Positions 3,932-39,097 of a stretch of 64,000 nucleotides of DNA are shown in pieces. Below the pieces are notes generated by a model. It was not told the DNA's origin and did no database searches. It worked only from the letters and a program-made list of their open reading frames with translations. The position numbers were made by a program, and so were the translations under genes. The stretch is from the IMG/VR virus record IMGVR_UViG_3300040801_002079, positions 62,001 through 126,000 of that record; one strand, written 5' to 3'. Positions within the stretch are counted from its first letter, which is position 1. Every line of letters begins with the position of its first letter.

Positions 3932-4018
3932 TGGTGCCGAGGGCGGGACTCGAACCCGCATGGGATTTCTCCCGGCAGATTTTAAGTCTGCTGTGTATAC
4001 CAGTTCCACCACCCCGGC
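3932..4018 (-). tRNA. tRNA-Leu(TAA)
   Basis: GCCGGGG acceptor, GCAGA-CTTAAAA-TCTGC anticodon arm, long variable arm, GGTTCGAGTCC, encoded CCA. Confidence 0.97.
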
Positions 4019-6842: not shown

Positions 6843-7612
6843 CACGTTTGTGTGCATTTCTACACTCCGTGGACTATATCACCACCCTCGTCATTAACGT
6901 TAGGGTGCGGGTCGCTCTAGCTGGTCATTAAGGGGACTTTACCCCTCCAGTAGTCTCTGCACCTTCCTAGAGTGTACTCTAGGCTTGGCTCAAGGTTTTC
7001 ATAGTAACCCATACTTTCTTGCCCATTTTCGTGCTCCATTGTCGCTGACATTATATTTCCTTCCTATGGCTAACCATGAAAGGTGATTCATGTCTTGCTT
7101 CAATTCGCCCTTAGTGGGCTTTGTTTTCCCTCTTTGCTGCTGGTATTTTAACTCTTTATACTTACCAGCACATTCTTTCGAACAGGTGTGCTTCTGCTTT
7201 GCCTGTAGAGTTTGAAAACAAATCTCACAGTATGTCGGTTCGGTTACCTTAGAGTTCCCTGAATTCAACCCGTTCCTTTCATAACTTTCGTGTATGAAGG
7301 CACCAGTATCAATCCAGTTATGTATTTTAACATGGTCTCCCCGACTAAGAACAATGAGATTCTCACTCCTGTTATTAGATCGGTTACAATCAAGATGATG
7401 AACAACTTCATTACTTTCTAGCTGTCTACCTAGATTGGATTCCACGACAAGAATGTGTTCGTAAACCCATCCCTTCCAGTTATCACAATCCATACTTGAT
7501 TGATAATCAGGTCTATACAACAACCTGTAACCATTTAAATACCGAACTGTCTTTTTACTTGTATCCATATGACTATTTATATCATATTCGAACCAAAGAT
7601 ACAAGTTTTTTG
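6843..7612 (-). mobile_element. Group I intron (IC3-like) in the tRNA anticodon loop, carrying an HNH gene
   Basis: Inserted after exon U, ends in G; P (GGGTTGAATTCAGGGAACTC), Q (AACCTTGAGCCAAG), R (GTGCAGAGACTA) and S (GATATAGTCC) elements present. Confidence 0.92.
6999..7568 (-). CDS. Intron-encoded HNH homing endonuclease with C-terminal Zn-finger and HTH
   Basis: YEHILV...EVVHHLDCNRSNN..ENL...H...H; CEIC..CSKEC; WLAIGRKYNVSDNGARKW; TATAAATA at 7574-7581. Confidence 0.9.
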   Translation of the reverse strand: MDTSKKTVRYLNGYRLLYRPDYQSSMDCDNWKGWVYEHILVVESNLGRQLESNEVVHHLDCNRSNNRSENLIVLSRGDHVKIHNWIDTGAFIHESYERNGLNSGNSKVTEPTYCEICFQTLQAKQKHTCSKECAGKYKELKYQQQRGKTKPTKGELKQDMNHLSWLAIGRKYNVSDNGARKWARKYGLL

Positions 7613-21384: not shown

Positions 21385-21476
21385 GTTGCAGTGGCAGAGT
21401 CTGGTTATGCGCTGGATTGCAAATCCAGTTAGTGCTCGAAAGGGCCACGCGGGTTCAAATCCCGCCTGCAACTCCA
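21385..21476 (+). tRNA. tRNA-Cys(GCA) with an atypical long variable arm
   Basis: GTTGCAG/CTGCAAC acceptor, U73, CCA; CTGGA-TTGCAAA-TCCAG anticodon arm; about 20 nt variable region. Confidence 0.88.
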
Positions 21477-21520: not shown

Positions 21521-21937
21521 ATGAAATATTGTCCAGTTTGTGAAACAACCAAAGAATTATCTGAATTTAATAGAAATAAAGCAAAGAAGAACGGGGTTGC
21601 TTCTACGTGTCGTGAGTGTATGAAAATTTATAGGTCACGATATTACAAGAAAAACAAAGAACTTGTAATGGAGAAGGCATCTAAGCGTCGAATTGAACTT
21701 AAAGAATGGCTTGAAGATTATAAATCTGATAAAAAATGCATTAAATGTGGAATGGATCATCCAGCAACACTAGACTTCCATCATCGTGATGAATCAGAAA
21801 AAGAATTTAGTATTGCTACTGGCATTGGTCAATTGGGTAAAGGAAAACAATCGTTATTGGATGAAATAAATAAGTGTGATATACTATGTTCAAATTGCCA
21901 TAGAATATTACATTACGAAGAACGTAAGCGGGAGTAG
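21521..21937 (+). CDS. Free-standing HNH homing endonuclease
   Basis: CPVC..CREC N-terminal Zn motif; CIKCG....LDFHH...K...EINKCDILCSNCHR.LH; late promoter 21508-21515. Confidence 0.88.
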   Translation: MKYCPVCETTKELSEFNRNKAKKNGVASTCRECMKIYRSRYYKKNKELVMEKASKRRIELKEWLEDYKSDKKCIKCGMDHPATLDFHHRDESEKEFSIATGIGQLGKGKQSLLDEINKCDILCSNCHRILHYEERKRE

Positions 21938-22003
21938 CTCAGTTGGTAGAGCATCGGCCTTCCAAGCCGATTGTCGCGGGTTCGATCCCCGTCTCCCGCT
22001 CCA
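21928..22003 (+). tRNA. tRNA-Gly(TCC)
   Basis: GCGGGAG/CTCCCGC acceptor, TCGGC-CTTCCAA-GCCGA, GGTTCGATCCC, TCCA; 76 nt. Confidence 0.97.
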
Positions 22004-25792: not shown

Positions 25793-26067
25793 TCATATAG
25801 TATCAAATCCCTGTGTCCGTGTCAACCCATGGGGAATCAGAAAAGTGAATTGCGAAATCTTCAGACAGTATATGGTTACCGTCTCTGTCCCAATACACAC
25901 GGTATATAACATGGAAGAGACCGCAACGGCGCAACTCACGTACTCGGAATATATGATAGTGCTCACCCTCTTCAGGAACGTAGGAAGCGGCATATTCCTC
26001 AACGGTTTGATTTCCCAGATCAATAAACATGATGACATTATATCATGAAAAAAGTACTACCGAAAGC

Positions 26068-26253
26068 TTGACAGGCACCCTTGTTTTTAGTATAATGTAC
26101 CTACAGTCAAAGGAGAACTAACCCACTCCCAACAGCAAACAATAGGGTTAGGAAGTACCGGAGAGAGGGCCATGAGCAGGGGGAAATCTGTCTTTTTTAT
26201 TTTTTGCGCGAACCTGCTACTACCAGTATAACATATTTTCCAAGAGAATACAA
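26068..26253. ncRNA. Convergent-promoter small RNA module, copy 1
   Basis: TTGACA-17-TATAAT (+) faces TTGTAT-17-TATACT (-); CTAACCC/GGGTTAG stem with a CCCAACAGCAAACA loop. Confidence 0.55.
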
Positions 26254-26308
26254 GCTTGTTTCGAAGTTATTTTTGTGTTAAGCTCTTGGGGCTATGAGAA
26301 AATTGTAC

Positions 26309-26480
26309 TGTTGCATTTTTGCAACACAGTCGCCTATGTGTGGTAAAAAAACAACGGAAGTAAAATTCCGGAATCCCACTGTGCTTGGGTGTTATACCTC
26401 GGTACAACACCACCGTACCACATCACCCCACCAGACCAGAGACTGAATCTCCAATGGGTAAACCCCAATGGGGTTTTATC
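26309..26480. repeat. Origin-like module, copy 1 (TGTTG-N8-CAACA boxes and CACCCCACCAGACC / CCCAATGGGGTTTTA blocks)
   Basis: Direct sequence similarity to 35778-35970. Confidence 0.7.
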
Positions 26481-28399
26481 TATGGGGGTTACATTACGCA
26501 GAGCAGAAAGATAAAGTAACACCAATGTTATAACCTGTTGTACTTCAGGAAATGTCTTTATATTAGATAATGCTAATAAGGTACCATTTCACACTGTACC
26601 ACATTGCATTACATTGTATTACACATGCTTTTAGTAAAACAGGAACACGGTGTGCCTACAATGAGGGCAGTGTTTCTTTACCATGCCCTGATCAACGATG
26701 CCATCCTTTGAATAGGGTAGCAGCACACTGGTAACATTGTATCGATGCACTCTGAGCTTGCAGAGAAGGCTTCTAAGCCGGTTGTTTATAGTATTCAAGA
26801 ACTTCATCATATGATGCTGGGCGACAGCCCTCCTTAGGTACAACGAAGGGTGGAAGACCTTTGCAGCTTCCGTCCAGTAGTATTCCGTTAGGTCTATGCT
26901 CAATGTATGGGAAATAACAATTGCATGATGCTACGTAATACCACTCCCTCTCCATTAGTTTGTGTATATGCTTCATAGCTAAAAACAATTAGGGTTTTCG
27001 ATTTGAAAACCGAAATATCGTTTATGTATTTAGACCGGTAAATCGTTTTTAGGAATCATTCCTACTAACTTGGACACAACTTCTCCTTTGAGAGTTTCAT
27101 CCTCATAGTCAAAAGCGGAGTCATCGAACTCTGACTTTAACAGTAGACCATACCACTCGTCTATGTCACTATCGTATGACACGCAGTAGAGATGACGAGG
27201 ATTCTCATCACAGAACTCATAGTCTGTATATCCCTCATGACGTTGTACTATACCGCAATATTTAAACATGTTACCAGCCTCGTGTTAGGGCATCAAACCC
27301 CTCCGAATGATGCGTTAATGTGACAGGGCCAAATCATCATCATTCCAACTGAGTTTGCCACGTTCCCGGAGACCCGTGTGTTGTTATAGTCTCCTCAAAT
27401 TATTTTATAGTTGGAATGATGCCTGTATTATAGCACTTTCTTCGGCTCCTCTCCAGTGAACAACCGGTGAAAGAAACCGAATAACTTCCATGCAATCCAC
27501 CCCAAGCAAACCAGTGCAAGGGCAAACCAATGGAACCCGAGCATGAATGCATACACAATCAAACCGATTGTGAAGTACACGGCTGCGAAGGTTATGGCAA
27601 ACCCGATAAGGGCGAATATGAAATTGAAAAAGAGTTGAAGTAAGAACATGTCTACACCATGAAGAAAGGCTTTCTTTCTGTCTTCAGATAATGATAAGTC
27701 AGGGGATCATCCTTGGGGTGATCTGCTGGGTACACTTTCCGGAACCAGACTTCGTACTCACTCCAGAACTTCCACCATGGTGAGGTGAAGACGTACTCTA
27801 TGAACACGTAGTGATATTCTTTACCGGTAACCGGCTCGAAGAAGTATTGGGTCTTCCGGGGCTTGTCACTGAAGAGTTTCATCGTTCTGATATCACCTCA
27901 GAGACCCAGAAATCGATAACGTCCCAGTTGATACCAATCTCAGCGTCGAAGCGTCTCCTCAGGTTGTAGAGAACCGTCTTAAGCTCCACCTCAGACAGGG
28001 TGGTGTCATAGTTCTCCTCAGCAATGCTCATTACGTCCTCAGCGCTCCAGAGAATGGCAATGGCAAGACCGTCTTCAATCTTGTCAAGGTTACGCTCCAG
28101 TTGCTGGGCATGATCATATGCTGCATTAGTAAGGAATTGAATCATGATTATACCTCGAAGTCTCCGCTAAGCTCACAGTAGTCTGCAACCCACTCCACCT
28201 CAATACCATCGTGATTGAAACCACGAACGAGGAAGGAATGGTCATTAAGCTTCTTGATAAGTGAGACAGTACTACCTGCGCAGTCCTGTCGGGTGGAATC
28301 CTTGCGGGGCTGGTACGTAACGAACATGTTGTTAACTCCAGTTGGTTTTTGATGATGTAAACATTATAACCGATCATGCCCGAGATGTCAATCCCTCAT

Positions 28400-28544: not shown

Positions 28545-29759
28545 CTAGGGCAATACGTGAGTCCAGCTTTCCCAATCACGAATCCTGCGAATGGTACGGT
28601 CACTGACACCGAACATCTTGGCAAGTGACGTAAGACTGTCGTAAGCACCCTGTTTCAGAATCTGTCGAATCTGCTTCACGGTCTTATCGTTCAGCTTGGC
28701 ACTTGCAGACGCTACAGGCGCATCATCCTCATCGTCCGTTGCTTCTGTATCATCCCAATCAAAGACTTCATCATCGGAATAGTCATCTGCTTCTACTTCG
28801 AACGCTCCCTCGTTGACACGGGCACCCGCAACAACTTCTTCGTTTAGAGCATCCCAAATGTACTGATCAGGATCACCAGCGCGGAAGTCTCGCGCACCCT
28901 GTCGAGTAACAAACGCATCGACAAGGACATCAGTGTCAGTGTCACGAACTTCCCAACGGAAACCGGACGTATCGAAATCAATTTCATCCTTGACTTCCGG
29001 TGACGGTTCCGAGTACTCGTTGGTGAACCACGGCTTGATGATATCATCCCAAGAGATTGCATCAACAATTTCGTACTTGCAAGCACGACCTTTGGCATTG
29101 TTGTAATCAGTAGGAATGGAAGTCACATCACGGGGATTGACTTTGACCACGACCACCTGATCATGGTTCTCCGTACCATACTGACCGAGATACCCTTCCG
29201 AGCAGAAGTGCAGACCCGTAGAGCAGGTACGTCCACGATTGAAATCACAGTCTGCACGGTTCATTTCCAGAACCTGTCCAACGCTGTTGTCCATCGTGCG
29301 AGTGTAGATATCCTTGAAGTCAGGAGTGACCATCTTGTATGCAAGGAAGTGACCATCAGCAGTGATGGGAAGATTGCAGGCTTCGATGAAACCGTAAATC
29401 TCTTCCACGATGGTTCCGCTCTCATTCGGATTGCTCATCACATTGTCGAGGAACAGAGTCAACGGAGTGATATCAAATCCTTCCTTGAACATTTCCACGA
29501 TACGGGTAGCAAGCAGAGCAGGAATCTTCTCGTACTTCTCTGAGCGGAGGATACCGTTCAGCAGGTACAGACCACCGTTACTTTCGGAAATCAGGCGACC
29601 CTTGATATCCAGAATCGTCGGGACCAGATCAAAGTTCTTGTCACGAATCGCGGCACGAACTTCATTGTATCGGTCATCACCTTTGTTGACTGTCATCGGC
29701 TTACCATCAATCACAAAGACGATGGAAGTCGGAGTCACGGTGTAAGCTAAATTACTCAT
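28545..29759 (-). CDS. rIIB: rIIB lysis-inhibition protein with acidic linker and C-terminal HTH
   Basis: LPITADGHFLAYK, MDNSVG...M.R..CD.....CSTGLH, KVNPRDVTSIPTDYNNAKGRACKY. Confidence 0.95.
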   Translation of the reverse strand: MSNLAYTVTPTSIVFVIDGKPMTVNKGDDRYNEVRAAIRDKNFDLVPTILDIKGRLISESNGGLYLLNGILRSEKYEKIPALLATRIVEMFKEGFDITPLTLFLDNVMSNPNESGTIVEEIYGFIEACNLPITADGHFLAYKMVTPDFKDIYTRTMDNSVGQVLEMNRADCDFNRGRTCSTGLHFCSEGYLGQYGTENHDQVVVVKVNPRDVTSIPTDYNNAKGRACKYEIVDAISWDDIIKPWFTNEYSEPSPEVKDEIDFDTSGFRWEVRDTDTDVLVDAFVTRQGARDFRAGDPDQYIWDALNEEVVAGARVNEGAFEVEADDYSDDEVFDWDDTEATDDEDDAPVASASAKLNDKTVKQIRQILKQGAYDSLTSLAKMFGVSDRTIRRIRDWESWTHVLP

Positions 29760-32158
29760 TTGTTTTCTCCTGTGTTGATACTAACGTTAGCGTAGTCAAT
29801 CACCGCTTTCTGGAACTCTTCTTTCTCACCTGAATACCACGGGGAGGAAACGTGATCCAGAAGTTTTAATTGACTGTTTACATTATCCACCATTTCGGTG
29901 TATTTGTCAACCGTTTCGGCAACAAAATCCGAGGGTTCTGGCAGATCAGAGTCACCCATGAAGCGCACCAATGCTTGAATTGCTTCGAACTTGGCTGACG
30001 GGTAACGCTTGTTAAAAAGTTTCTTAAAGCGAATCAGGGTGCGAACAGGATGGTTCTCATCCAAACGATCAAACTCTTCTTCGCTTACGGATTCGATTCG
30101 GGAAACAACTTTGGATTCACGAATCTTTTCACGAACCGCAATCAGGTTATTACGATTAACCAAATCAACCGGAACTTCCACATTCTCTCGCAGTTCCTTG
30201 ATCAAGTCCTGAATAGGCTTGAAACCGTATGTCAGGGCTTTATCGTACCGTGCGCGAGACAGGGCAAGGATAACCGTATTATCGTGGTCAAAATCCATCT
30301 CACTGTTCAGGTAGTGCTGGATGAATTGCAGATCGTCATATTCCAGACCTTCGATTTCGCACCTGTGCGTTTGGATAATGTACGCATCAGTATCAATCTT
30401 GGTCAGCGGAGTGTAGACATCCGTCCAGTACTTAGTAGAACCAAAACTGTGCTTCTCATGCTTGAACATCCGAGCAACAGGCGTGGTATTCGAACCGTAT
30501 GCAACCGTGCTGATGTTCTTGGGCAGTTCGATACTGGACAGGTAAACCAGTGTCAGATTATCATCGACAACCTCTTCCAGCATTTCCAGTGCATCATCAT
30601 CGTAGGTATCCAGAGTCAGCACTTCGCTACCTTGCAGACCATTTTCTTCTAAGTAGAACTTGATCTTTTTCAGGAACGAGTAACTATTGTCCCTGATGAA
30701 AACAATCCTGCTCTCAGTAGGGTTAATGAAAACATCACTGTTCAGGCGCGAGGTTTTACCATTGTGCTCATTGTACTCTGACCAGCGCAGTTTGTACTGG
30801 CGGTAGTGACCGTGGTTGGCAAGCTTCGTTTCCACGTTACCCTGATCATCTTCAATGTCAATCCATTTCAGGGAAGTGTAGTCACCCCAACCCGTGAGAG
30901 GCAGAGAGATAGCATTCTTGCTGTAACGGAAATTCGGATTTCCGACCATCTTGCGAACACGCTTCGATGACAGGTCAACAATGCTGAAATTGCGATTCAG
31001 GAAAACGGCTTTCTCATAGTCCGTCATAGAATCATCGTCAATGGAATCCAGCACGTAACCCGTGTACTCATCCATCGCTTCACGTTCACGTTCCTGAATC
31101 TTGGCAATCGTATCATCGTCGTACTGCAAATCCTCACGGGAGGCAGTAACCATGACTTCACCAATGTCAAACCGTGCAACCAGATTCTGCTGGAACAGGT
31201 TATTGCTCAGGTAACGAATGTTGTACGCATTATTACCAACGCAAGCGAATCCCTTGTTCCACGAATCACTGTCCAAATCCTCTTCGAACAGGATGAAGTG
31301 TTCACCCTTGTAAGCAACCTTCGGGAACTCCACTTCATCGTTCAACACGACAGGCAGGGGATCAAAGTACTTCAACTGATCCACAATCGCTTTCTTGAAC
31401 GTATGGTAGTCATCGGGAGCAACGGCAATCTTCACTTCCAGACCATTGTCCTCATCAGTATCAACCGTCATCATCAGATTGATTTGCGGCATACCGTGTT
31501 CGTTGGTCAGAATGTTGTAGACCCGCTTGATTCCATTGTACCGATTAGTAACAATGAAGTTATCGGTGTAGGCAAGCGGAGTCTTTGAACCGAGTCCAAA
31601 GGCACCCGTGAAGTCATTCGACTGTTCCTTCGTAGAACGAAAGTAGGTGCTGTAGAGAACCAACGTATCGTCAAACTCGACTGCAACGTCCTTACCGGAG
31701 AAGTCACCGGGAACACGCAGAACCGTTTGCTTGTTGGTATTGTCATACAGGATGGCACCAATGTTAACCGTCTCAGTTTCACCGAGAACGACCATGTTGA
31801 TACCTTCGATTTCCTTGCGGATATCACCGTCAATGAAGATGGTGGATTCACCTTCGTGCTCATTGACAATGTTAGCATTGTGCTTGAAGTAGCGCAGACC
31901 CGTACCGAAATCCTTCACTTCAAAATGAGGATCAAAGGCAGACGGGCAGGATACTTCGAACGGTACTTCCGGCTTACCAGCGGCGATATGTGCATCGTAA
32001 GCATTGGAGCACAGTTCACGAACAATCGTGGATTCGATTTCGGAGTACATTCCACTGGACAGAACGTTAAAGGCTTTACCGTTCATATCAATGCTGAAAT
32101 CGACATTGATGCTCATTCCAGCAGACTGTACAGACTTGGCTTGTGTATTGAGTTTCAT
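29756..32158 (-). CDS. rIIA: rIIA protein (GHKL ATPase N-domain)
   Basis: KAFNVLSSGMY...VRELCSNAYDAH, DFGTGL, STK..SN.FTGAFGLGSKTP.AYTD; ATGA-coupled to rIIB. Confidence 0.95.
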   Translation of the reverse strand: MKLNTQAKSVQSAGMSINVDFSIDMNGKAFNVLSSGMYSEIESTIVRELCSNAYDAHIAAGKPEVPFEVSCPSAFDPHFEVKDFGTGLRYFKHNANIVNEHEGESTIFIDGDIRKEIEGINMVVLGETETVNIGAILYDNTNKQTVLRVPGDFSGKDVAVEFDDTLVLYSTYFRSTKEQSNDFTGAFGLGSKTPLAYTDNFIVTNRYNGIKRVYNILTNEHGMPQINLMMTVDTDEDNGLEVKIAVAPDDYHTFKKAIVDQLKYFDPLPVVLNDEVEFPKVAYKGEHFILFEEDLDSDSWNKGFACVGNNAYNIRYLSNNLFQQNLVARFDIGEVMVTASREDLQYDDDTIAKIQEREREAMDEYTGYVLDSIDDDSMTDYEKAVFLNRNFSIVDLSSKRVRKMVGNPNFRYSKNAISLPLTGWGDYTSLKWIDIEDDQGNVETKLANHGHYRQYKLRWSEYNEHNGKTSRLNSDVFINPTESRIVFIRDNSYSFLKKIKFYLEENGLQGSEVLTLDTYDDDALEMLEEVVDDNLTLVYLSSIELPKNISTVAYGSNTTPVARMFKHEKHSFGSTKYWTDVYTPLTKIDTDAYIIQTHRCEIEGLEYDDLQFIQHYLNSEMDFDHDNTVILALSRARYDKALTYGFKPIQDLIKELRENVEVPVDLVNRNNLIAVREKIRESKVVSRIESVSEEEFDRLDENHPVRTLIRFKKLFNKRYPSAKFEAIQALVRFMGDSDLPEPSDFVAETVDKYTEMVDNVNSQLKLLDHVSSPWYSGEKEEFQKAVIDYANVSINTGENK

Positions 32159-33291
32159 ATGACCTTCCGTGTAAAGGTTAATCTCTAAATGTGGATACAT
32201 TATAGGTGATATCGTATCCAATGTCAAGTGCTTAGTGAAACTTTTTTTAAACTAGATTTCGGGCTTCCATTTCATCGATGATGTTCTGGTACAACTGGAA
32301 CACCTCTGGGGGCGGAGTACATTCTTCACACATAGAGTTTAGGGTGCCTTCCACACTCTTGTGCATCATTTGTAAATCTTCATCCGCAAGTTCTGATAGT
32401 ATTATAGGACTACCTTTCTGCATTGTCAAGGTACTCGTTTCCAGAGTCAACCAATAAGTTTACCACATTTTTACTGATCATGTCAAATATCGTACTGAAC
32501 TCATCTTCCTTGGTTTGCTCTGGTACAGCCGCAAGAGATGGATTACATAGGGCAAACTCCAGAAGCATACGAGATTGAACAGCAGCAGCATCCTCAGCGT
32601 GTTTTCGCATGTTGGCTCGTATGGCATCAACATCCGCTTTATGTTCGCTTAGACGTTGCTCCAGAAATAATTCGAATTGTTGTACTTTCTTATCCCAAGG
32701 GTTCATAATGTTATAGTTATCCTTTCAGTACTCTTATTTATAGAAATCAGGACAACAAGTTAACTTTGGGAACAAACTCAATCATATCCATGACAGTGTA
32801 TGCTGTATCCCATTCTTCTGGCATTGGGAGAGTCGGGATCACTTCATCGATGTACAGACCGACATCTGGACGATAGGGTTCAAAGTTAACATGATCCTGA
32901 ATGTCAGAAACAATATCATCAGCGTGATCCTCAGAGGTTGCTTCCACAATAAAGAAGGCAGGGACAATGTAACGTTTCGTAGACATCATAGTTTCCTCTA
33001 GATGACTTCACCGTCAAACACTTCCAGATCACGAATGAGCATGTTATCCATGGTCCAGTTGGTCATCAGGGAATTAACGTATTCAATGACTTTGGCATTG
33101 ACTGAGTTTAGATCAACAGTGCTATAGATGCAGCGGCTTGATCCCGAATCGGGGCGGCACATTACAAGGTAATCCAGATCACTAATGCGATAGCTTGCAA
33201 TGAGAGGTCCTTCATGCTGGTACTTCTCAAAGTGAAGCTTGGCTAGCATTTCATTCGTGCTGGGCATAATGTTCTCCGTGTAAAGAAAAAG

Positions 33292-33453
33292 TGGTGGTCA
33301 GGTAGGCTTCGAACCCTACATAGGACAATGTTGTCAAACGGTCTTGTGTTTCTGTTTCGGACGCATCCTACTACAGAAAGCTTTTCCTGTTTTCCTGTGA
33401 ATGTACCGGGGCATATCTTTGGGCAAATGATACATTCATTAAACTACTGACCA
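33292..33453 (-). ncRNA. tRNA-mimic RNA (acceptor and T arm with about 115 nt of unrelated internal structure)
   Basis: UGGUCAG-UAG start, GUAGG-GUUCGAAG-CCUAC-CUGACCA-CCA end; internal GAAUGUAUC/GGUACAUUC and UUUCUGU/ACAGAAA stems. Confidence 0.65.
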
Positions 33454-35121
33454 CTCCGATTCATGTACTATGTGGAAATCAATTGGCAAAATGCCTAGCA
33501 CATGAACCCAACGTTCTGGTGATGCTCCCCCGCCCTGTGCATGGGGTTAAAAAGGGAGCACCACACTCCATTCAATCAACTCGGGTGACAAACACCTCAC
33601 CGTCCTTGATAAAGGACATTATAGCATACTGGTACATATATGCAACCTCTCCATCACGTTCCCACTTCACAAGCGGAAACAGATCGGGGTCTTCAGGGTA
33701 ACGGTAGACACCATTGGCATCAACTTCACCACCCTTCATTTCAAACAAACCGAATCCATAGTTGTCATCAACCTGCTTCTGAAATGAATCTTCAGTCGTG
33801 ACATCAATCCAGTACGGAATCAATCCACATGCGTCCACCAGATACTCAGGTTCAACGTCACTGAAATGATCAGTCGGGTCAACCTCAAACCGATGCTGGG
33901 GATGAATAGACATAGTTGACATACTGTGTACTCCGTGTTTGTTTAACGATGAAACAATGTTACCACAGTGAAATCAGGATTGCAACCCTGCGGCACGTTT
34001 ATACAGATTGTACCCTGCTTTGTGATCGTTTGCATCACCATCACTTGACCATGTAAAATCATCATTAACCGCTTCCAATGCAAACAGGGTAGCGACCACG
34101 ATTTCATCATAGGGTCTACGGGCAGTCTTACAGAATTCTCCTCTGGCACCATCCCGGTAAACCACGAAGGTTTCATAACCATCGTCATCGACACCGTTGA
34201 AGCGAATCCTGTCTCCATCAATCATCGGAGGTTTGGGAACATCATATTCAAACTGTACCGGGACGCTTGAAGCATTGATGATCTTACCAGCAAGCTCAGT
34301 AGCTTTCTTCCACTGCTCGGGGGTAAACCCACGGTGACTCCAATAATGCGTGTAACCCATGTTAGTGCTCCTGTGTGTAATGAGAGAGGTCAGTATACTC
34401 CACTTCACGGGAAAATACAACCGCAATCAGTTCATCCAGATAACGAATATGCTTAATGAACCATGCAACATCCGATTCATTACCGGCTTGCTTATGTTCA
34501 ATAAGTCGTTCGACACAATGCATTTGATCCCTTCGTAAAACTCTCCAGAGATTCTCGGTATCAGTAGCATCCAGTTCGAATTCAAATTTCATCCAAACTA
34601 TCCGTATATGAATTAACGATAATAGCGATAATTTCTAAATGCATGTCAACCATCCATGGCTCAGGGGCATCTTTTATTTCTTCACCTACCGGCTCAACGA
34701 AGATATTACATCCATCAGTGAATTCAATAAAGAGATTAAGGTCTGATTCCATTTCAACTGTCTTAATCGTTTTACCTATCAAGTGCTGAAGGTCTGATTC
34801 GTGTGTTACTATTTTATGCATGGTTATATACCCATTTAGTTACAAGTTACTATCGAACCGTCCGTATTATACTTCACAGACGCACCAGAGGTGAACTGGA
34901 GGTACTGAACACCGTCTACACAGATTTCACTGTACCCTGTAAACTTGGCACCAACCCGTTCCATCTGACCACAACCGGACATTGCTACAGCAACAATGAT
35001 AATAGACGGTAGGAACATGAGCACCGGGAGGATACGACTAATGTATTTGTTTTCTTCTTGCATGACATTCTCCATTCAAATGTTGCGACATTATAACATG
35101 GAAAAAAGTTAGGGTAAAGGC

Positions 35122-35308
35122 TTGACAATGCTGGCAGCATTTGGTATTATACTAACCATCAAAGGAAGTTGAAGCAGACGCACCCAACAACCAACATATA
35201 TGTCTGCGAAGTAACCTACGAAGCACTGCGGTTGTCGAAGTCTATCTTTTTTATATAAAAGGAAACATCCGCTACTATAAGTATATCATAATAGCGGATG
35301 CATTGCAA
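35122..35308. ncRNA. Convergent-promoter small RNA module, copy 2
   Basis: TTGACA-17-TATTAT (+) faces TTGCAA-17-TATACT (-); GCAGAC/GTCTGC stem with a CCCAACAACCAACA loop. Confidence 0.55.
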
Positions 35309-35317
35309 GTGATGTGT

Positions 35318-35527
35318 TTAACTGCCCCGATTGACAGTATGTGAAATATCCAATAGCTGATCAATGAAGTTCTTTACGACATCTTTATCCAATCCGGATT
35401 TTTTAATGTCCATCGCAAGCTGTTTGCATTTCCCAGCAACAACTGATCCCAAATCCTCACCTTCGGTTATAACCTCATCATTAGATTCAACCAACAGATC
35501 ATTCCATTTGTCTTCCCAGTTTTTCAT
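35318..35527 (-). CDS. Small late protein with LVES/ITEG putative protease-cleavage motifs
   Basis: GATAAATA at about 35550 and a GGAG RBS upstream. Confidence 0.6.
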   Translation of the reverse strand: MKNWEDKWNDLLVESNDEVITEGEDLGSVVAGKCKQLAMDIKKSGLDKDVVKNFIDQLLDISHTVNRGS

Positions 35528-35559
35528 AACATTCTCCAGTGTTTACATTATTTATCAAA

Positions 35560-37400
35560 TTGCTTGACTTGATAACATCGTTTTGGTATAATGTACTTAA
35601 TGGAGATACATGAGAGACGGTAGGGGGGAGGGTGGACGATTATATTATAAATTCCTAATTTAGTACTAATTGATATTCCTCAAGGGGGTTGACACTTGAT
35701 CCCCAATTTGATACAGTATACCCATCATCATCATTCTAGCTGACGCTGGAAGGGTGGTGTTCGCCCTCATGAAAGTTTGTTGTATAAATACAACAGACTA
35801 CAGGAGAGTGTTGCTTATGTACAACATTGTGGTAAAAAAACAACAGAACCAAACTTCTGTTGTATCCCCGCAACATAGGTGTACTACTACACTACAACAC
35901 CACCGGGGTACGACACCCCACCAGACCCCGAAACGGAAAAGCCAATGGCAATTCCCAATGGGGTTTTAAAATCCCAATGACAATTTCCAATAGACATTCA
36001 CAATAGAAAAAATAGACATTTTTGCATATAGTCAAAACGGTCAAATTTGATATATACTTATAACATGCGCGGTTTTTGAAAACGGAATTAAAAGTGGGAC
36101 TTCCCTGTCCCTTTGGGCCTCGAACTTCCCTTTCAAGAATTACTCAACTGAACTTGGGTCGGAGGAATATAAAAGGTAACATTCCTCACGAATTAACCTT
36201 TCTCCTCCGGTAGCATAAAGAACCATTCCATCTGGTCCCATATTAACACCCGATATAACATGAAAACGAACCTGACCATTTTCTCCAATGGTTGCAACTG
36301 TATCATTCATCTGAGGAGTCAGTTCACTCTCTTCAGTGCACGGTCCATATAATTCTATTTCTAGTCTTCTGTTCATAAACGTATTTAGCTCCCTTTTCAA
36401 AAGTTGTATTTTTACCTGTTAACGGTTTTTTACAATGCTCATACTGTTTTAATTATACTATTATTTAGAATGCCAAAAACAATTAGGGTTTTCAAAACCA
36501 AAACCGAAATATCGTTTAGGGGTTTTGAAATGAAAACCGAAATATCGTTTGGAATATTGTCTAATATTCTGCTTCAGTATACTTGCAACAGTTTGAGCAT
36601 TGTGTTATAATACACTCTGTTAAACAACATAGGAAAGTACAATGCCACAAGACTTAATGACATGGGTTGCTGGATTCTCTGTTGCAGGGTTCATCTACCT
36701 TCTCTACCGTAACTGGATAATGTCCCACGCTATTCAAACCTTGTGGGAAACGTTCAAATCGGAAACTGAACGCATGGAGTCTGATCATCATCTTGAAAAA
36801 GCACTTAACGATACTCTGATTGGTAGTTTTATTGAAACGATTGAGAGGTTCGATGAGCGTTTGAACATTATTGAAAAGGGTATGGACATTGTAGAAGAAC
36901 AATCAGGAGAAACTAATGAATGACCTTAAGGCATTAGGGACTATTATATCTTTGGGTGGAGCTTTCTTACTCCATGATATGCCATGGAATCATTTTGTAG
37001 GTATAATACTAATGGTTATAGGATTCTTTTTCTGGATGAGGGAATTAGATTAGATTAGAAAAAACTAATATATTAATCCCGTAGGGGTAAAGTAAACTAA
37101 GTCTTTGATTTAGTTGAAGATTAAGTTTTTGCCTATTTGTAGGAAAAACAATTTGGGCATTGATCGCGCCCTATGGTAAAACCGATTTATATGCATTCTC
37201 CCCACAAAAATACCACAATGTCCCAACTTTCCCCACAAATTGCCCCGTTATTGACCTTTTCTATTCTGTTGAAAGCCTTGATCTATAGCCATTTTCTTCT
37301 ATTTATATCAGAATGATATCACAATGATATCACAATGCCATCAAAGTGGGTTTTTCGGGGTAATTTTCTGTTCACATAATTGATCTATCCCCCTTCCTGT
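35560..37400. other. Putative replication origin / strand-divergence region
   Basis: Gene orientation switches divergently here; four TGTTG-N8-CAACA boxes, CCAAT repeats, tandem AAAACCGAAATATCGTTT repeats, a G-run after the promoter at 35564, AT-rich stretches. Confidence 0.5.
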
Positions 37401-38059
37401 GTTATAATGTTACCACTTTAACACTTAGAGTACTAAAAATGTATAGCGACGAAGAACTGATTGAGCGAATACTAAACCATGAGTTTCCACCGTATCCATT
37501 TGATGACAAGTACGTTAACGTATCTGAAAAGAAATTAAAAGAGTTCATTGAACCCTATCTACTGCTGAGGATATATTACGATAACTTACTTGATGAATTG
37601 AAGCAACTGGAAAGTGAAAATTCTATTCCCGTATCAACCATTAAGAGGCTTATAAATTGCTATGAATACTAGAAAGCGTGAACGTGAACCGTTTAGAAAT
37701 CTGGACCCCCAAGCATTCTTTGAGGACTGTGGAAGGCCATTGGATCGTCAACGAGAACTTAAAGTAATAAACAAAAGAGTGCGGTGGTTACAGAATGAAA
37801 TGGAAAACCATGGCTATGAACCTACAAAGCGAGATATTGAATGCATGGCTGAGAACTTTGTAGAGGTTCTTGATATGATTGCCCACATGGAGATGGGCCT
37901 GATTGATATCTACAGACTTACCTTCCCTGCTTATAGTCCACACCATTATGGATGTGAAGTTGGTCCTAATGGAAGATACCGTGACAATGAAATAATTGAT
38001 GCCATGGTGGGTATTGGTAGAATTCTGGAATTGATTGCACCCTACGAACGGAGAAACTT

Positions 38060-39097
38060 ATGGTAGAAGAAGCCTACGTCTATCTGTGGAGAGATTCTGT
38101 AAACAAGAAATTCTATCTTGGGTATCATAAAGGATCACCTGATGATAACTATGCCCATTCATCATCGGTTATGGAATCCTTTAAAATGAATTCTGTCCCT
38201 AATGGGTATAAACGTAGAATACTTGCGTTTGGATCAAGGGAAGAGATGTTAGCACTTGAGGAAACTCTGCTTAAGAATAGAAAGGAACGAGGTCGGTGGC
38301 ATAAGTATCATAATATGAAGACATGCTCATTTCCTTATCTCTGGGATGATCCTGAGTATCGTGAGAAGATGAAAGCGTTATGGGATGATCCTGAGTTTTA
38401 TAAGATGAGGTCTGAAGAAACATCCGCTAGACTTAAAGAAATGTGGAAGGACCCTGAGTATCAGAAAATGCAGTCGGAACTGATGTCAGCTAGAAATAAA
38501 GAGTGGTGGGATGACCCTGAGTATCGTGAGAAGATGGCAAAAATGATGTCGATTCGAAGCAAGGAGTGGTGGAATGACCCTGAGTATCGTGAGAAGATAT
38601 GTGCCGCATTGAAAGCGGCATGGGATGATCCTGAGTATCGTGAGAAAATGGCTGAGATTATGTCAGTTCGTGTTAAAGAACTATGGAAAGACCCTGAATA
38701 TCGTGAGAAGATGGCTGAGATTATGTCAGTTCGAAGCAAGGAGTGGTGGAATGACCCTGAGTACAGACAGATGAAATCTGAAAGTATGTCGATCCTACAC
38801 AAAGAACTATGGAAAGACCCTGAATATCAGAAGAAAATGTCTAAGAAGCGAAAGGCTATGTGGAAAAACCCCGAGTATCTAAAAAAACAAGCTGAAAATA
38901 TGGCAGTTCGAAGTAAAGAACTATGGAAAGACCCTGAATATCGTGAGAATATTTCTAAAAAAATGAAAAAAAAATGGGAAGACCCTGAGTATCGTAAAAA
39001 GATGCGGGCTATTTGTACGGTGTGCGGGCACGAATCTCAAAAATCAGTAATAACACGATACCATAACGATAACTGTAAGTTTAAGAACAAACAATAA
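38060..39097 (+). CDS. GIY-YIG (Seg-like) endonuclease with 12 tandem W.DPEY repeats
   Basis: YVYLW......KFYLGYH.G...D.Y..SS N-terminal domain; repeat array; C-terminal CTVCG...RYHNDNCK. Confidence 0.85.
   Translation: MVEEAYVYLWRDSVNKKFYLGYHKGSPDDNYAHSSSVMESFKMNSVPNGYKRRILAFGSREEMLALEETLLKNRKERGRWHKYHNMKTCSFPYLWDDPEYREKMKALWDDPEFYKMRSEETSARLKEMWKDPEYQKMQSELMSARNKEWWDDPEYREKMAKMMSIRSKEWWNDPEYREKICAALKAAWDDPEYREKMAEIMSVRVKELWKDPEYREKMAEIMSVRSKEWWNDPEYRQMKSESMSILHKELWKDPEYQKKMSKKRKAMWKNPEYLKKQAENMAVRSKELWKDPEYRENISKKMKKKWEDPEYRKKMRAICTVCGHESQKSVITRYHNDNCKFKNKQ

What the first reader, a model, noticed from the sequence alone, without database searches (positions are those of the whole stretch)
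35778..35970. Array of palindromic TGTTG-N8-CAACA boxes at the strand switch, duplicated at 26.3 kb
Seen: boxes start at 35778, 35809, 35828 (TGTGG variant) and 35858, spaced 31/19/30 bp, and at 26309 and 26339, spaced 30 bp. Both arrays continue with GGTGT..TACAACACCACCG, CACCCCACCAGACC and CCCAATGGGGTTTTA. Inference: roughly helically phased sites for a dimeric protein, marking twin replication origins or a partition/packaging site.
Basis: partly seen in the sequence, partly recalled or inferred. Interest (0 to 1): 0.68.

Follow-up and report, generated by a model that had tools for sequence, protein, structure and literature searches.

The report
Phased dyad boxes in phage control modules
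The palindromic boxes are real, conserved, helically phased DNA sites for an unidentified dimeric protein, lying in two copies of a 1-kb control module of an uncultivated jumbo phage, but whether they serve transcription control, replication or DNA-end handling is still open.

Summary
Perfect TGTTG-N8-CAACA occurs four times in the 316.8-kb phage genome, only at 26.3 kb and 35.8 kb of the window. The TGTGG variants beside them are true boxes: a relative has perfect boxes there.

The boxes lie in two collinear copies of a ~0.95-kb gene-poor module (A 26060-27025, B 35556-36550). A degenerate third copy lies outside the window. The modules flank rIIA/rIIB.

Five contigs from four further uncultivated phages keep the layout: four boxes at the strand switch, two downstream of rIIB, half-sites TGTKG/CMACA. 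Fifteen of 16 box spacings fall within 1 bp of a multiple of 10. Mismatches at box position 4, the phasing and a frame shift between blocks argue against hairpins and coding. They favour a dimeric DNA-binding protein on one helix face.

The binder and the function are not identified. My best guess is an operator-like array controlling the adjacent promoters (0.36). A replication origin (0.25) or a role at the inner end of a long terminal repeat (0.18) is not excluded.

One lead: a two-fold depth step at 37.19-37.25 kb, and a TGATATCA double repeat shared with Xanthomonas phage XacN1 at its repeat boundary, suggest that the window left of 37.2 kb is a long terminal repeat collapsed in assembly.

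The parts
35778..35795 (.). Box B1, TGTTGTATAAATACAACA. It is the box nearest the conserved promoter block.
   Evidence: A box sits at the same position in G001, L391 and L393, with its centre 48.5-49.5 bp from the conserved GCTAGAAT block.
35809..35826 (.). Box B2, TGTTGCTTATGTACAACA.
35828..35845 (.). Box B3, TGTGGTAAAAAAACAACA. On the minus strand it reads TGTTGTTTTTTTACCACA, which is the archetypal box of this lineage.
   Evidence: The orthologous site in G001 is a perfect TGTTGTTTTTTTGCAACA, and the same form recurs in L393.
35858..35875 (.). Box B4, TGTTGTATCCCCGCAACA. Its left arm can also pair with the right arm of B3 to form a minus-strand hairpin followed by a run of T.
26309..26326 (.). 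Box A1, TGTTGCATTTTTGCAACA.
   Evidence: Orthologues are TGTTGCCCTAGCGCAACA (L389), TGTTGCACGCACGCAACA (L392) and TGTTGTTTTTATACAACA (G001).
26339..26356 (.). Box A2, TGTGGTAAAAAAACAACG. This is the variant box, 30 bp from A1.
   Evidence: A perfect box stands at this position in G001.
35878..35927 (.). A further dyad, GGTGTA..TACAACACC, with a wider N10 spacing, followed by the conserved blocks TACAACACCACCG and CACCCCACCAGACC. The copy in module A is at 26389-26437.
   Evidence: The dyad form GGTGTGGTAC-N4-GTACAACACC is seen in L389 and L392.
35943..36010 (.). Direct repeats CCAAT(G/A), which read YCATTGG on the minus strand, at 11-19 bp spacing. They include the CCCAATGGGGTTTTA hairpin plus T run, and an AT-rich stretch follows up to about 36070. 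The copy in module A is at 26448-26478.
   Evidence: 2-5 copies in orthologues, spaced 10-14 bp in L391, L392 and ours; the 100-bp window at 35964 is 76% AT, top 0.75% of the genome.
35722..35757 (.). Conserved block, read on the minus strand as CCTTCCAGC-N5-GCTAGAATGATGATGATG. It is unique in the genome and is found only in B-type modules.
35689..35717 (+). Rightward sigma-70-like promoter GGGGGTTGACA-17-TACAGT, pointing into the boxes.
   Evidence: It is conserved in L393 (TTGACA-17-TATAGT) and L391 by reading the sequences.
35564..35592 (+). Rightward promoter P(+), GCTTGACT-17-TATAATGTAC. The copy in module A, at 26068-26096, matches the consensus perfectly.
   Evidence: It is conserved in G001, L389 and L392.
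26103..26212 (+). Element E2, a ~105-nt conserved non-coding element between P(+) and a run of U. It is probably a small RNA. Module B holds a shortened version at about 35600-35660.
   Evidence: The hairpin stems covary: CTAACCC/GGGTTAG, GUAGUCC/GGACUGC, GAATCC/GGATTC. Six of the 19 predicted pairs show changes on both sides.
26225..26253 (-). Leftward promoter TTGTAT-17-TATACT, which faces E2 and lies 60-75 bp downstream of the boxes.
   Evidence: The orthologues are TTGACT-17-TATAAT in G001 and TTGTAT or TTGCAA-17-TATACT in L389 and L392.
36475..36550 (.). Element T1, AAACGATATTTCGGTTTTC-N5-GAAAACCCTAATTGTTTT read on the minus strand. It is present as a tandem pair in module B, and as single copies at 26981-27024 and in module C.
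   Evidence: It is kept in every relative.
36140..36376 (-). Small gene B_R1 (78 aa) inside module B, followed by a terminator-like hairpin at 36096-36111.
   Evidence: The model is an all-beta barrel with pLDDT 87 and no significant fold match.
26773..26976 (-). Small gene A_R2 (67 aa) inside module A.
   Evidence: homologues in L389 and L392.
28545..32227 (-). rIIB (28545-29759) and rIIA (29756-32227), which lie between the two modules.
   Evidence: The same order is found in G001, XacN1 and Xoo-sp13.
37187..37332 (.). Inferred inner end of a long terminal repeat (depth step between 37187 and 37249), next to three TGATATCA-like repeats (37303 with one mismatch; 37314 and 37325 perfect) spaced 11 bp apart.
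   Evidence: and PMC5852040 for the XacN1 repeat, which ends at 65,875.

Best explanation
The boxes are DNA binding sites, about 18 bp long, with consensus TGTKG-N8-CMACA and a centre that is T-rich in the direction of leftward transcription. They would be bound by a dimeric sequence-specific protein that has not been identified and is probably phage-encoded. The sites all lie on one face of the helix, so several dimers could bind cooperatively and build a higher-order complex.

The arrays belong to a duplicated control module that also carries strong sigma-70-type promoters facing each other, a small antisense-type RNA element (E2) and a second kind of phased repeat. My best guess at the function is an operator or roadblock array. 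It would set which of the facing promoters wins, and so time the expression of the leftward gene blocks that start at modules B and A, and read-through towards the rightward genes.

Shown: the sites, their conservation, their phasing, their fixed position beside a conserved promoter block, and that they are neither coding nor hairpin-driven. Inferred: that a protein binds them, which protein, and that the outcome is transcriptional.
For: - The motif is confined to the two arrays in 317 kb.
- G001 has the same layout, four boxes at the strand switch and two downstream of rIIB, 10.8 kb apart. The Baltic and other metagenome contigs L389, L391, L392 and L393 keep it too. This holds despite about 70% DNA identity and GC contents from 0.3 to 0.47.
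- Spacings are 30/19/31, 50/20/41, 19/20/31, 50/31/59, 30, 27, 30, 30. Fifteen of 16 are within 1 bp of a multiple of 10, so insertions and deletions kept the helical phase.
- Half-sites vary at position 4 (TGTTG, TGTGG, TGTAG against CAACA, CCACA). That breaks hairpin pairing but suits protein recognition.
- The conserved blocks are read in different frames in A and B, so the longest ORFs across them are not genes (reading).
- In all four B-type modules the last box is centred 48.5-49.5 bp from the conserved block GCTAGAATGA..., which overlaps the start region of the conserved rightward promoter. In A-type modules the boxes lie 83-118 bp upstream of the -10 hexamer of a conserved leftward promoter.
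- Consensus promoters are dense here, and P(+) is conserved in every relative.
Against: - No binder was found. The flanking small proteins have no Pfam or PHROG match. B_R1 is a beta barrel with no informative fold match. The HTH tail of rIIB is missing in G001, which still has the boxes.
- More than 20 other consensus early promoters in the same region have no boxes. A regulator with only two target sites in 317 kb is unusual for a lytic T4-like phage.
- There is no transcript evidence. The one metatranscriptome run holds nothing at site B, though it is available as contigs only, so this is weak.
- The leftward 'promoter' at B has no recognisable -35 element, and the conserved block may instead be the 5' end of the rightward transcript.
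- The phased direct repeats, the AT-rich stretch and the position near a probable terminal-repeat boundary fit other functions equally well.
Confidence: 0.36

Rival explanations
1. The modules are replication origins. An initiator protein would bind the phased dyad boxes and/or the YCATTGG repeats. The neighbouring AT-rich DNA would open, helped by transcripts from the strong promoters acting as R-loop primers, as at T4 origins. Modules A and B would then be two origins, or an origin and an auxiliary site.
For: - There are arrays of 4-7 phased 18-bp repeats, plus a second set of short direct repeats with about 11-13 bp spacing.
- An AT-rich window next to them in B is in the top 0.75% of the genome.
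- Module B sits at the point of divergent transcription, with a local GC-skew minimum, in this phage. In G001 the divergent switch is there too, and GC skew turns clearly positive from about 9 kb.
- The replication genes are T4-like.
- T4 has several origins, some at transcription divergence points. oriE combines an early promoter, small genes and evenly spaced repeats (PMC3016281).
- From my own knowledge, not checked here: SPP1 (oriL and oriR) and P4 (ori and crr) have two distant sites bound by one initiator.
Against: - The skew minimum at B is only local. The global extremes at 166 and 258 kb carry no boxes, and every one of them coincides with a switch in gene orientation.
- Module A shows no skew inflection and is only moderately AT-rich.
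- No initiator-like gene lies in or beside the modules.
- T4-type origins are not known to need dyad iterons.
- No replication data could be obtained.
Confidence: 0.25
2. The arrays serve the genome end. They lie in the gene-poor region at the inner end of a long direct terminal repeat, and they would act like the repeat-rich injection-stop region of phage T5, or in forming and packaging the terminal repeat.
For: - Contig depth in the source sample is 6.7-7.8 left of 37187 and 3.5-4.4 right of 37249.
- Homology with XacN1, whose 65,875-bp terminal repeat ends 73-91 bp from the same TGATATCA double repeat at the syntenic place, predicts the boundary at about 37242 (PMC5852040).
- XacN1 and Xoo-sp13 have phased TTAAC repeat arrays just inside that boundary.
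- T5 has a 1.66-kb non-coding, repeat-rich region at the inner end of its terminal repeat, conserved in order among relatives, with a second copy of its main repeat about 3.3 kb further in (bioRxiv 10.1101/866236). That matches the arrangement of modules B and A.
Against: - The depth step rests on per-contig k-mer means from one run, a measure the tool itself warns is poor.
- The outer end of the repeat was not located.
- The boxes lie 1.3-1.4 kb from the inferred boundary, and the TGATATCA repeats lie much closer.
- XacN1 and Xoo-sp13 have no TGTKG boxes.
- Two-step DNA entry is not known for this phage group, and even in T5 the role of the repeats is unproven.
Confidence: 0.18
3. The boxes act at the RNA level. 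They would be hairpins, including an intrinsic terminator for leftward transcripts at TGTTGTTTTTTTACCACA, inside a non-coding RNA or leader transcribed across the element.
For: - Both sites score as minus-strand terminators, with different hairpins (ACAACAGAAG/CTTCTGTTGT at B, CGGAA/TTCCG at A) before the same run of T.
- The plus strand of B folds better than shuffles, z = -4.25.
- A conserved promoter points into the boxes, and CCCAATGGGGTTTTA looks like a plus-strand terminator.
Against: - Many boxes carry a mismatch at position 4 that breaks the 5-bp stem.
- Spacing kept in multiples of about 10 bp has no meaning for RNA.
- L391 has four boxes but no hairpin-plus-T-run. In L392 the hairpin is separated from the run of seven T by CTTCCGTTG.
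- A-type modules have no conserved promoter directly upstream on the plus strand.
- There is no Rfam match, even at E up to 10.
- No RNA contig covers site B.
Confidence: 0.1
4. The arrays are a partition (centromere-like) site bound by a ParB- or ParR-type protein.
For: - The boxes are arrays of phased dyad repeats.
- They begin with TGTT and end with AACA, like the common parS site. This resemblance is from my own knowledge and is a lead only.
Against: - The genome looks like a lytic T4-like jumbo phage, with rII genes, T4-type polymerase and a large terminase.
- The centre of the boxes is variable, unlike parS.
- No ParA or ParB gene was seen near the modules.
Confidence: 0.03

Closest known systems
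Phage lambda operator clusters OL and OR (from my own knowledge)
   Same: Both have two separated clusters of about 17-18-bp dyad sites for one dimeric protein. In both, the sites stand next to divergent or facing promoters and binding is cooperative.
   Different: Here there are 4-7 and 2 sites, phased on one helix face. The host is a lytic T4-like jumbo phage. No repressor gene lies beside the sites, the clusters are 9.5 kb apart, and extra repeat types and a small RNA element are present.
Phage T4 origins, especially oriE (PMC3016281)
   Same: Both are in a T4-like genome. In both, a cis element sits at a point of transcription divergence and compositional shift, combines an early promoter, small genes and evenly spaced repeats, and occurs at several sites per genome.
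   Different: The T4 oriE repeats are 12-nt direct repeats, not 18-bp dyads, and their role is itself unproven. No replication data exist here.
Injection-stop (iss) region of phage T5 (bioRxiv 10.1101/866236)
   Same: Both are long non-coding regions full of direct and inverted repeats at the inner end of a long terminal repeat. In both, the order of elements is conserved among relatives while flanking genes diverge, and a second copy of the key repeat lies a few kb further inside the repeat.
   Different: The T5 copies are inverted relative to each other, whereas these are direct. T5 has paired DnaA boxes, and these boxes are not DnaA boxes. The terminal repeat here is only inferred.
Ori-lambda iterons (from my own knowledge)
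   Same: Both consist of four 18-19-bp dyad-symmetric repeats with an internal A or T tract, closely spaced, next to AT-rich DNA.
   Different: Ori-lambda lies inside the initiator gene O, and no such gene is found here. The replication machinery of this phage is T4-like.
TTAAC repeat arrays of Xanthomonas phages XacN1 and Xoo-sp13
   Same: The arrays occupy the same syntenic place: the large intergenic region at the divergent switch upstream of rIIA. They are followed by GGGGTTGACA-type promoters and lie near the TGATATCA double repeat.
   Different: The repeat unit is different, a short TTAAC at about 10-11 bp spacing. There are no TGTKG-N8-CMACA boxes in the 22.7-kb stretches examined.

Membership tests
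Dimeric-protein operator or dyad binding-site array | Repeated sites with two inverted half-sites at a fixed distance | tested here: met
   Six sites here and 12 or more in relatives fit TGTKG-N8-CMACA.
Dimeric-protein operator or dyad binding-site array | Half-sites conserved while the centre and flanks drift | tested here: met
   Orthologous boxes differ freely in the N8 centre, for example CATTTTTG, CCCTAGCG, CACGCACG and TTTTTATA.
Dimeric-protein operator or dyad binding-site array | A cognate DNA-binding protein that binds the sites | not testable with these tools
   No candidate was found by Pfam, PHROGs or fold search. Binding needs an experiment.
Dimeric-protein operator or dyad binding-site array | Sites positioned relative to a promoter | tested here: inconclusive
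   The distance to a conserved block is fixed in B-type modules. However, promoters are predicted only, and the block could belong to either strand.
Iteron-type replication origin | Phased repeat array next to an AT-rich unwinding region | tested here: inconclusive
   This is met at B, where AT content is in the top 0.75%, and is weak at A, top 3-7%.
Iteron-type replication origin | Initiator gene in or beside the origin | tested here: not met
   No Rep-, O-, DnaA- or primase-like gene is present. The only genes there are the unannotated 67- and 78-aa ORFs.
Iteron-type replication origin | Replication starts there, shown by a marker-frequency peak or a skew inflection independent of gene strand | tested here: inconclusive
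   The local skew minimum coincides with the gene-strand switch. The global extremes lie elsewhere.
Intrinsic terminator or structured RNA | Stem kept by compensatory changes and followed directly by a U run | tested here: inconclusive
   This is true for B, G001 B' and A. It is absent in L391 and displaced in L392. The run of T is part of the box consensus.
Intrinsic terminator or structured RNA | The boxes themselves form hairpins | tested here: not met
   Position-4 mismatches (TGTGG..CAACA, TGTTG..CCACA, TGTAG..CAACA) are common.
DnaA-box cluster | 9-mers matching TTWTNCACA | tested here: not met
   The half-sites read TTTACCACA, ATACAACA or TTTGCAACA. The T at position 4 of the DnaA box is replaced. 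This comes from reading against the consensus quoted in bioRxiv 10.1101/866236.
parS centromere | Conserved 16-bp palindrome, with parAB genes in the genome | tested here: not met
   The centre is variable, and no Par genes were seen near the modules. The whole genome was not searched for ParB.
Packaging (pac) site | Lies in or next to the terminase genes, or at the physical DNA end | tested here: not met
   The large terminase is at genome 189,967-191,553, about 92 kb away. The inferred repeat boundary is 1.3 kb away and has its own conserved TGATATCA repeats.
T5-type iss region | Repeat-rich non-coding region at the inner end of a long terminal repeat, with a second copy further in | tested here: inconclusive
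   The layout fits. However, the terminal repeat is inferred from one depth step plus homology, and injection behaviour cannot be tested.

The most novel reading that the evidence does not exclude
This lineage of uncultivated rII-bearing jumbo phages has a terminal repeat of about 40 kb. The two box arrays form a protein-DNA complex at its inner end that halts or gates DNA movement, in the manner proposed for the T5 injection-stop signal. That would extend two-step genome delivery to T4-related jumbo phages.
Probability: 0.1. Interest if true: 0.8.

Novelty: new variant of a known kind. Interest (0 to 1): 0.5.

Why it matters
Almost nothing is known about the cis-acting DNA that runs jumbo phages related to XacN1 and Rak2. 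This module is a compact element, conserved across at least five uncultivated relatives, with clear sequence rules: 18-bp boxes, 10-bp phasing, and a four-plus-two layout around rIIA/rIIB. It therefore gives a concrete bait for finding the protein that organises the early region.

If the terminal-repeat lead holds, it also shows that the IMG/VR record is a collapsed assembly of a virion genome of about 357 kb. It would place the element at a position where T5 has its long-unexplained injection-stop region.

Tried and rejected
- **Known RNA families.** Rfam found nothing at either site, at gathering scores or at E up to 10.
- **Coding.** The 50- and 71-aa plus-strand ORFs across the element read the conserved block TGTGGTAAAAAAACAAC in different frames in A and B, so I rejected them.
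- **A 19-aa hydrophobic peptide in E2.** It looked conserved between this phage and G001, but its ATG is ACG in L389, L392 and the second G001 copy. Rejected.
- **A widespread TGTTG-box family in phages.** A scan for two boxes 5-35 bp apart hit at least 119 IMG/VR contigs. About 30 of these lie next to terminase genes, and the rest share no neighbouring protein family. The reversed control pattern hit 98 contigs, with the same share of multi-box arrays. The idea is not supported.
- **Single-block scans of IMG/VR** were uninformative. The T1 17-mer mostly hit an unrelated clade of jumbo phages.
- **Relatives by rIIA protein in IMG/VR.** None were found.
- **INPHARED DNA searches.** No match.
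- **B_R1 as the binder.** The model is confident, but its only fold resemblances are weak, Tudor- or SH3-like.
- **The rIIB C-terminal HTH as the binder.** It is absent from G001.
- **MotA and AsiA.** Not detected, although the control genomes gave no signal either.
- **A sigma-54 promoter with the boxes as enhancer sites.** The -24/-12 spacing does not fit, by reading the sequence.
- **A Chi-like reading of TCTGGTGG.** This is a lead from memory only and was not pursued.
- **Expression.** The metatranscriptome run X4 covers only 33290-33514 of the 5.9 kb laid.
Full report
**What the window is.** The window is bases 62,001-126,000 of a 316,801-bp IMG/VR virus record whose ends overlap by 117 bp. 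PHROG matches and tblastn place it among T4-related jumbo myoviruses. It has a family-B DNA polymerase, an SbcC-like nuclease, ribonucleotide reductase and a 976-aa head-tail adaptor. These are about 41-47% identical to those of Xanthomonas phages XacN1 and Xoo-sp13 and Stenotrophomonas phages CM1 and RAS14. The source is a microbial-mat metagenome, and a 95-99% relative occurs in a food metagenome.

**The observation.**
- The perfect motif TGTTG-N8-CAACA occurs four times in the whole genome, only at these two places. The reversed control pattern occurs once.
- The relaxed motif TGTKG-N8-CMACA gives 9 hits against 1.0 expected, five of them in the arrays.
- The four shared blocks that follow are identical and collinear.

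**The boxes are part of a larger module.** A k-mer comparison and an alignment show two collinear copies of a ~0.95-kb, gene-poor module: A at 26060-27025 and B at 35556-36550. The offset between them is nearly constant at 9489-9496 bp. From left to right on the plus strand they share:
- a near-consensus sigma-70 promoter, GCTTGAC(A/T)-17-TATAATGTAC;
- the boxes;
- a wider dyad, GGTGT..ACACC;
- CACCCCACCAGACC;
- CCAATGG-type direct repeats ending in CCCAATGGGGTTTTA;
- about 500 bp that is not conserved in sequence but is conserved in length;
- the element AAAAACAATTAGGGTTTTC-N5-AAAACCGAAATATCGTTTA (T1).

A third, degenerate copy at genome 58.7-59.65 kb keeps only the last two features. The flanking genes are not paralogous. 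The genes between A and B are rIIB and rIIA.

**Relatives.** A scan for paired boxes turned up a syntenic relative by chance: IMG/VR contig 3300037515_000188, called G001 here (109.8 kb, GC about 0.3).
- It has exactly two box clusters, four boxes and two boxes, 10.8 kb apart. The first is at the divergent strand switch and the second is downstream of rIIA-rIIB.
- A metagenome scan with a degenerate T1 pattern found L389 and L392 (A-type modules) and L390 and L391 (B-type).
- The small gene inside module B led to L393 and L394.
- These contigs share about 70-75% DNA identity with the window in coding parts.

**What the comparison shows.**
1. Box number and order are kept: four strong boxes in B-type modules and two in A-type.
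2. The half-sites are TGTTG, TGTGG or TGTAG on one side and CAACA or CCACA on the other.
3. The centre is free to vary but tends to be T-rich on the leftward strand.
4. Start-to-start spacings are 30/19/31, 50/20/41, 19/20/31, 50/31/59, 30, 27, 30 and 30. Fifteen of 16 are within 1 bp of a multiple of 10 although the values differ between lineages. If spacings were random, about 3 in 10 would qualify. The orthologues are not fully independent, but the B-type sets differ from one another and all 12 of their spacings are in phase.
5. Mismatches fall mostly at position 4 of one arm. That destroys a 5-bp stem but is ordinary for a protein site.
6. The conserved blocks are read in different frames in A and B.

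Together these points argue for double-stranded DNA sites bound by a dimer on one helix face. They argue against hairpins and against coding.

**Neighbouring features.**
- *Fixed distance in B-type modules.* In all four, the last box is centred 48.5-49.5 bp from a conserved block that is unique in the genome, CCTTCCAGC-N5-GCTAGAATGA(Y)GATGATG. Read leftward, this block holds a -10-like TAGAAT without a -35 element. Read rightward, it is the first ~20 nt after a conserved promoter, GGGGGTTGACA-17-TACAGT. I cannot tell which reading is the functional one.
- *A-type modules.* A conserved leftward promoter (TTGTAT-17-TATACT here, TTGACT-17-TATAAT in G001) has its -10 hexamer 83-118 bp downstream of the box centres. 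It faces the strong rightward promoter P(+).
- *Element E2.* Between these two promoters lies a ~105-nt conserved non-coding element. Its hairpin stem covaries between lineages, and one pair is a U-G wobble only on the plus strand. It is most simply a small RNA made from P(+) and antisense to the leftward leader.
- *Direct repeats.* To the right of the boxes lie 2-5 YCATTGG repeats spaced mostly 10-14 bp apart. In B an AT-rich stretch follows, in the top 0.75% of the genome.
- *Small genes.* Each module also holds a tiny conserved gene: A_R2 of 67 aa and B_R1 of 78 aa. B_R1 folds confidently as a small beta barrel but matches nothing informative.

**GC skew.** Cumulative skew has a local minimum at about 36-37.5 kb of the window. 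The global minimum (about 258 kb) and maximum (about 166 kb) lie elsewhere. All three coincide with switches in gene orientation. Skew therefore does not separate replication from transcription, and site A shows no inflection.

**A lead on the genome ends.**
- In XacN1 and Xoo-sp13 the same synteny holds: a large intergenic region at a divergent switch, then small genes, then rIIA and rIIB.
- Their intergenic regions contain phased TTAAC repeats and GGGGTTGACA-type promoters, and no TGTKG boxes.
- They also share with this window a double repeat, TGATATCA-N3-TGATATCA. Here it is at 37303-37332, and it is the only such tandem triple cluster in the genome.
- XacN1 has experimentally supported 65,875-bp direct terminal repeats (PMC5852040). 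The inner end of the repeat lies 73-91 bp from that motif, on the rIIA side.
- Transferred through the alignment, the boundary would fall at about window 37242.
- In the source-sample run X1, contigs left of 37187 have k-mer depths of 6.7-7.8 and those right of 37249 have 3.5-4.4.
- The tool warns that contig depth is a poor measure, and this is one run. Still, the two lines of evidence agree to within about 50 bp.
- If the lead is right, the GC-richer leftward early block is a terminal repeat of about 40 kb collapsed in the assembly. That block has GC 0.43-0.48 against 0.36-0.40 elsewhere and runs roughly from module C to 37.2 kb. The box arrays would then lie 1.3-1.4 kb (B) and about 11 kb (A) inside the inner end of the repeat.
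- Phage T5 has a comparable non-coding, repeat-rich region at the inner end of its terminal repeat, with a second copy further in. It has been proposed to be the injection-stop signal (bioRxiv 10.1101/866236).

**Controls that lowered a claim.** The paired-box scan of IMG/VR returned at least 119 contigs from many unrelated phages, which at first suggested a widespread family. The reversed pattern returned 98, with a similar proportion of 3-5-box arrays, and no protein family is a common neighbour. Paired dyad arrays with almost any arm sequence seem to be common in viral contigs, so I make no claim beyond this phage lineage.

**Verdict.** The sites are real, conserved and best read as a phased array for a dimeric DNA-binding protein. 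I rank the functions as follows:

| Function | Confidence |
|---|---|
| Control of the adjacent facing promoters | 0.36 |
| Replication origin | 0.25 |
| A role tied to the inner end of a terminal repeat | 0.18 |
| RNA-level structure | 0.1 |
| Partition | 0.03 |

None of these can be settled without reads, transcripts or binding assays.

Noticed in passing
window 37187-37332: There is a two-fold drop in contig depth between 37187 and 37249 in the source-sample run. Next to it lie three TGATATCA-like repeats, 11 bp apart. The double repeat is shared with XacN1 and Xoo-sp13 at the place where the 65.9-kb terminal repeat of XacN1 ends. The record is probably a collapsed assembly of a genome with a long terminal repeat.
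   Followed up: partly
window 26103-26212 (+); shortened copy about 35600-35660: A conserved ~105-nt non-coding element lies between a consensus promoter and a run of U. Its hairpin stem covaries in three lineages, so it is probably a small RNA. It faces a conserved leftward promoter.
   Followed up: partly
window 26981-27024, 36475-36550; genome 59590-59634: The element AAACGATATTTCGGTTTTC-N5-GAAAACCCTAATTGTTTT occurs at three places in the genome, as a tandem pair at one of them. Its non-stem parts are conserved in all relatives, so it is more than a plain terminator.
   Followed up: partly
window 33290-33514: This is the only stretch of 33000-38900 held by the metatranscriptome run (contig depth 23). 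It lies in an intergenic gap just downstream of a terminator-like hairpin at 33555-33569, and may be another small RNA or an abundant leader.
   Followed up: no
window 6850-7320 (-): A group I catalytic intron (Rfam RF00028, 62 bits).
   Followed up: no
window 3932-4018, 21385-21476, 21928-22003: Three tRNA genes (Leu-TAA, Cys-GCA, Gly-TCC) lie inside the early block, as in the tRNA-rich terminal repeat of XacN1.
   Followed up: no
window 28545-29759 (-): The rIIB homologue carries an extra C-terminal helix-turn-helix (…GVSDRTIRRIRDWESW…). L389 shares it, but G001 does not.
   Followed up: partly
window 1-35500 versus 36000-64000: GC content steps from 0.43-0.48 in the leftward early block to 0.36-0.40 to its right. 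The same step occurs near genome 59-60 kb.
   Followed up: partly
genome 58233 and 58899 (outside the window) and window 25487: There are near-identical promoter cassettes, GGGGTTGACAG(G/A)GGTTCAAAAAGGGAGTAAAATGTCTATCAGACA. The GGGGTTGACA class of promoter also occurs in XacN1 and Xoo-sp13.
   Followed up: no
window 36140-36376 (-) and 26773-26976 (-): Two tiny genes lie inside the modules, and each is conserved only in this phage lineage. The 78-aa one models as a confident all-beta barrel with no known relative.
   Followed up: partly
window 38060-39097 (+): A 345-aa protein matches the repetitive GerD and STI1/HOP DP-domain families in Pfam. It is probably a low-complexity repeat protein.
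   Followed up: no
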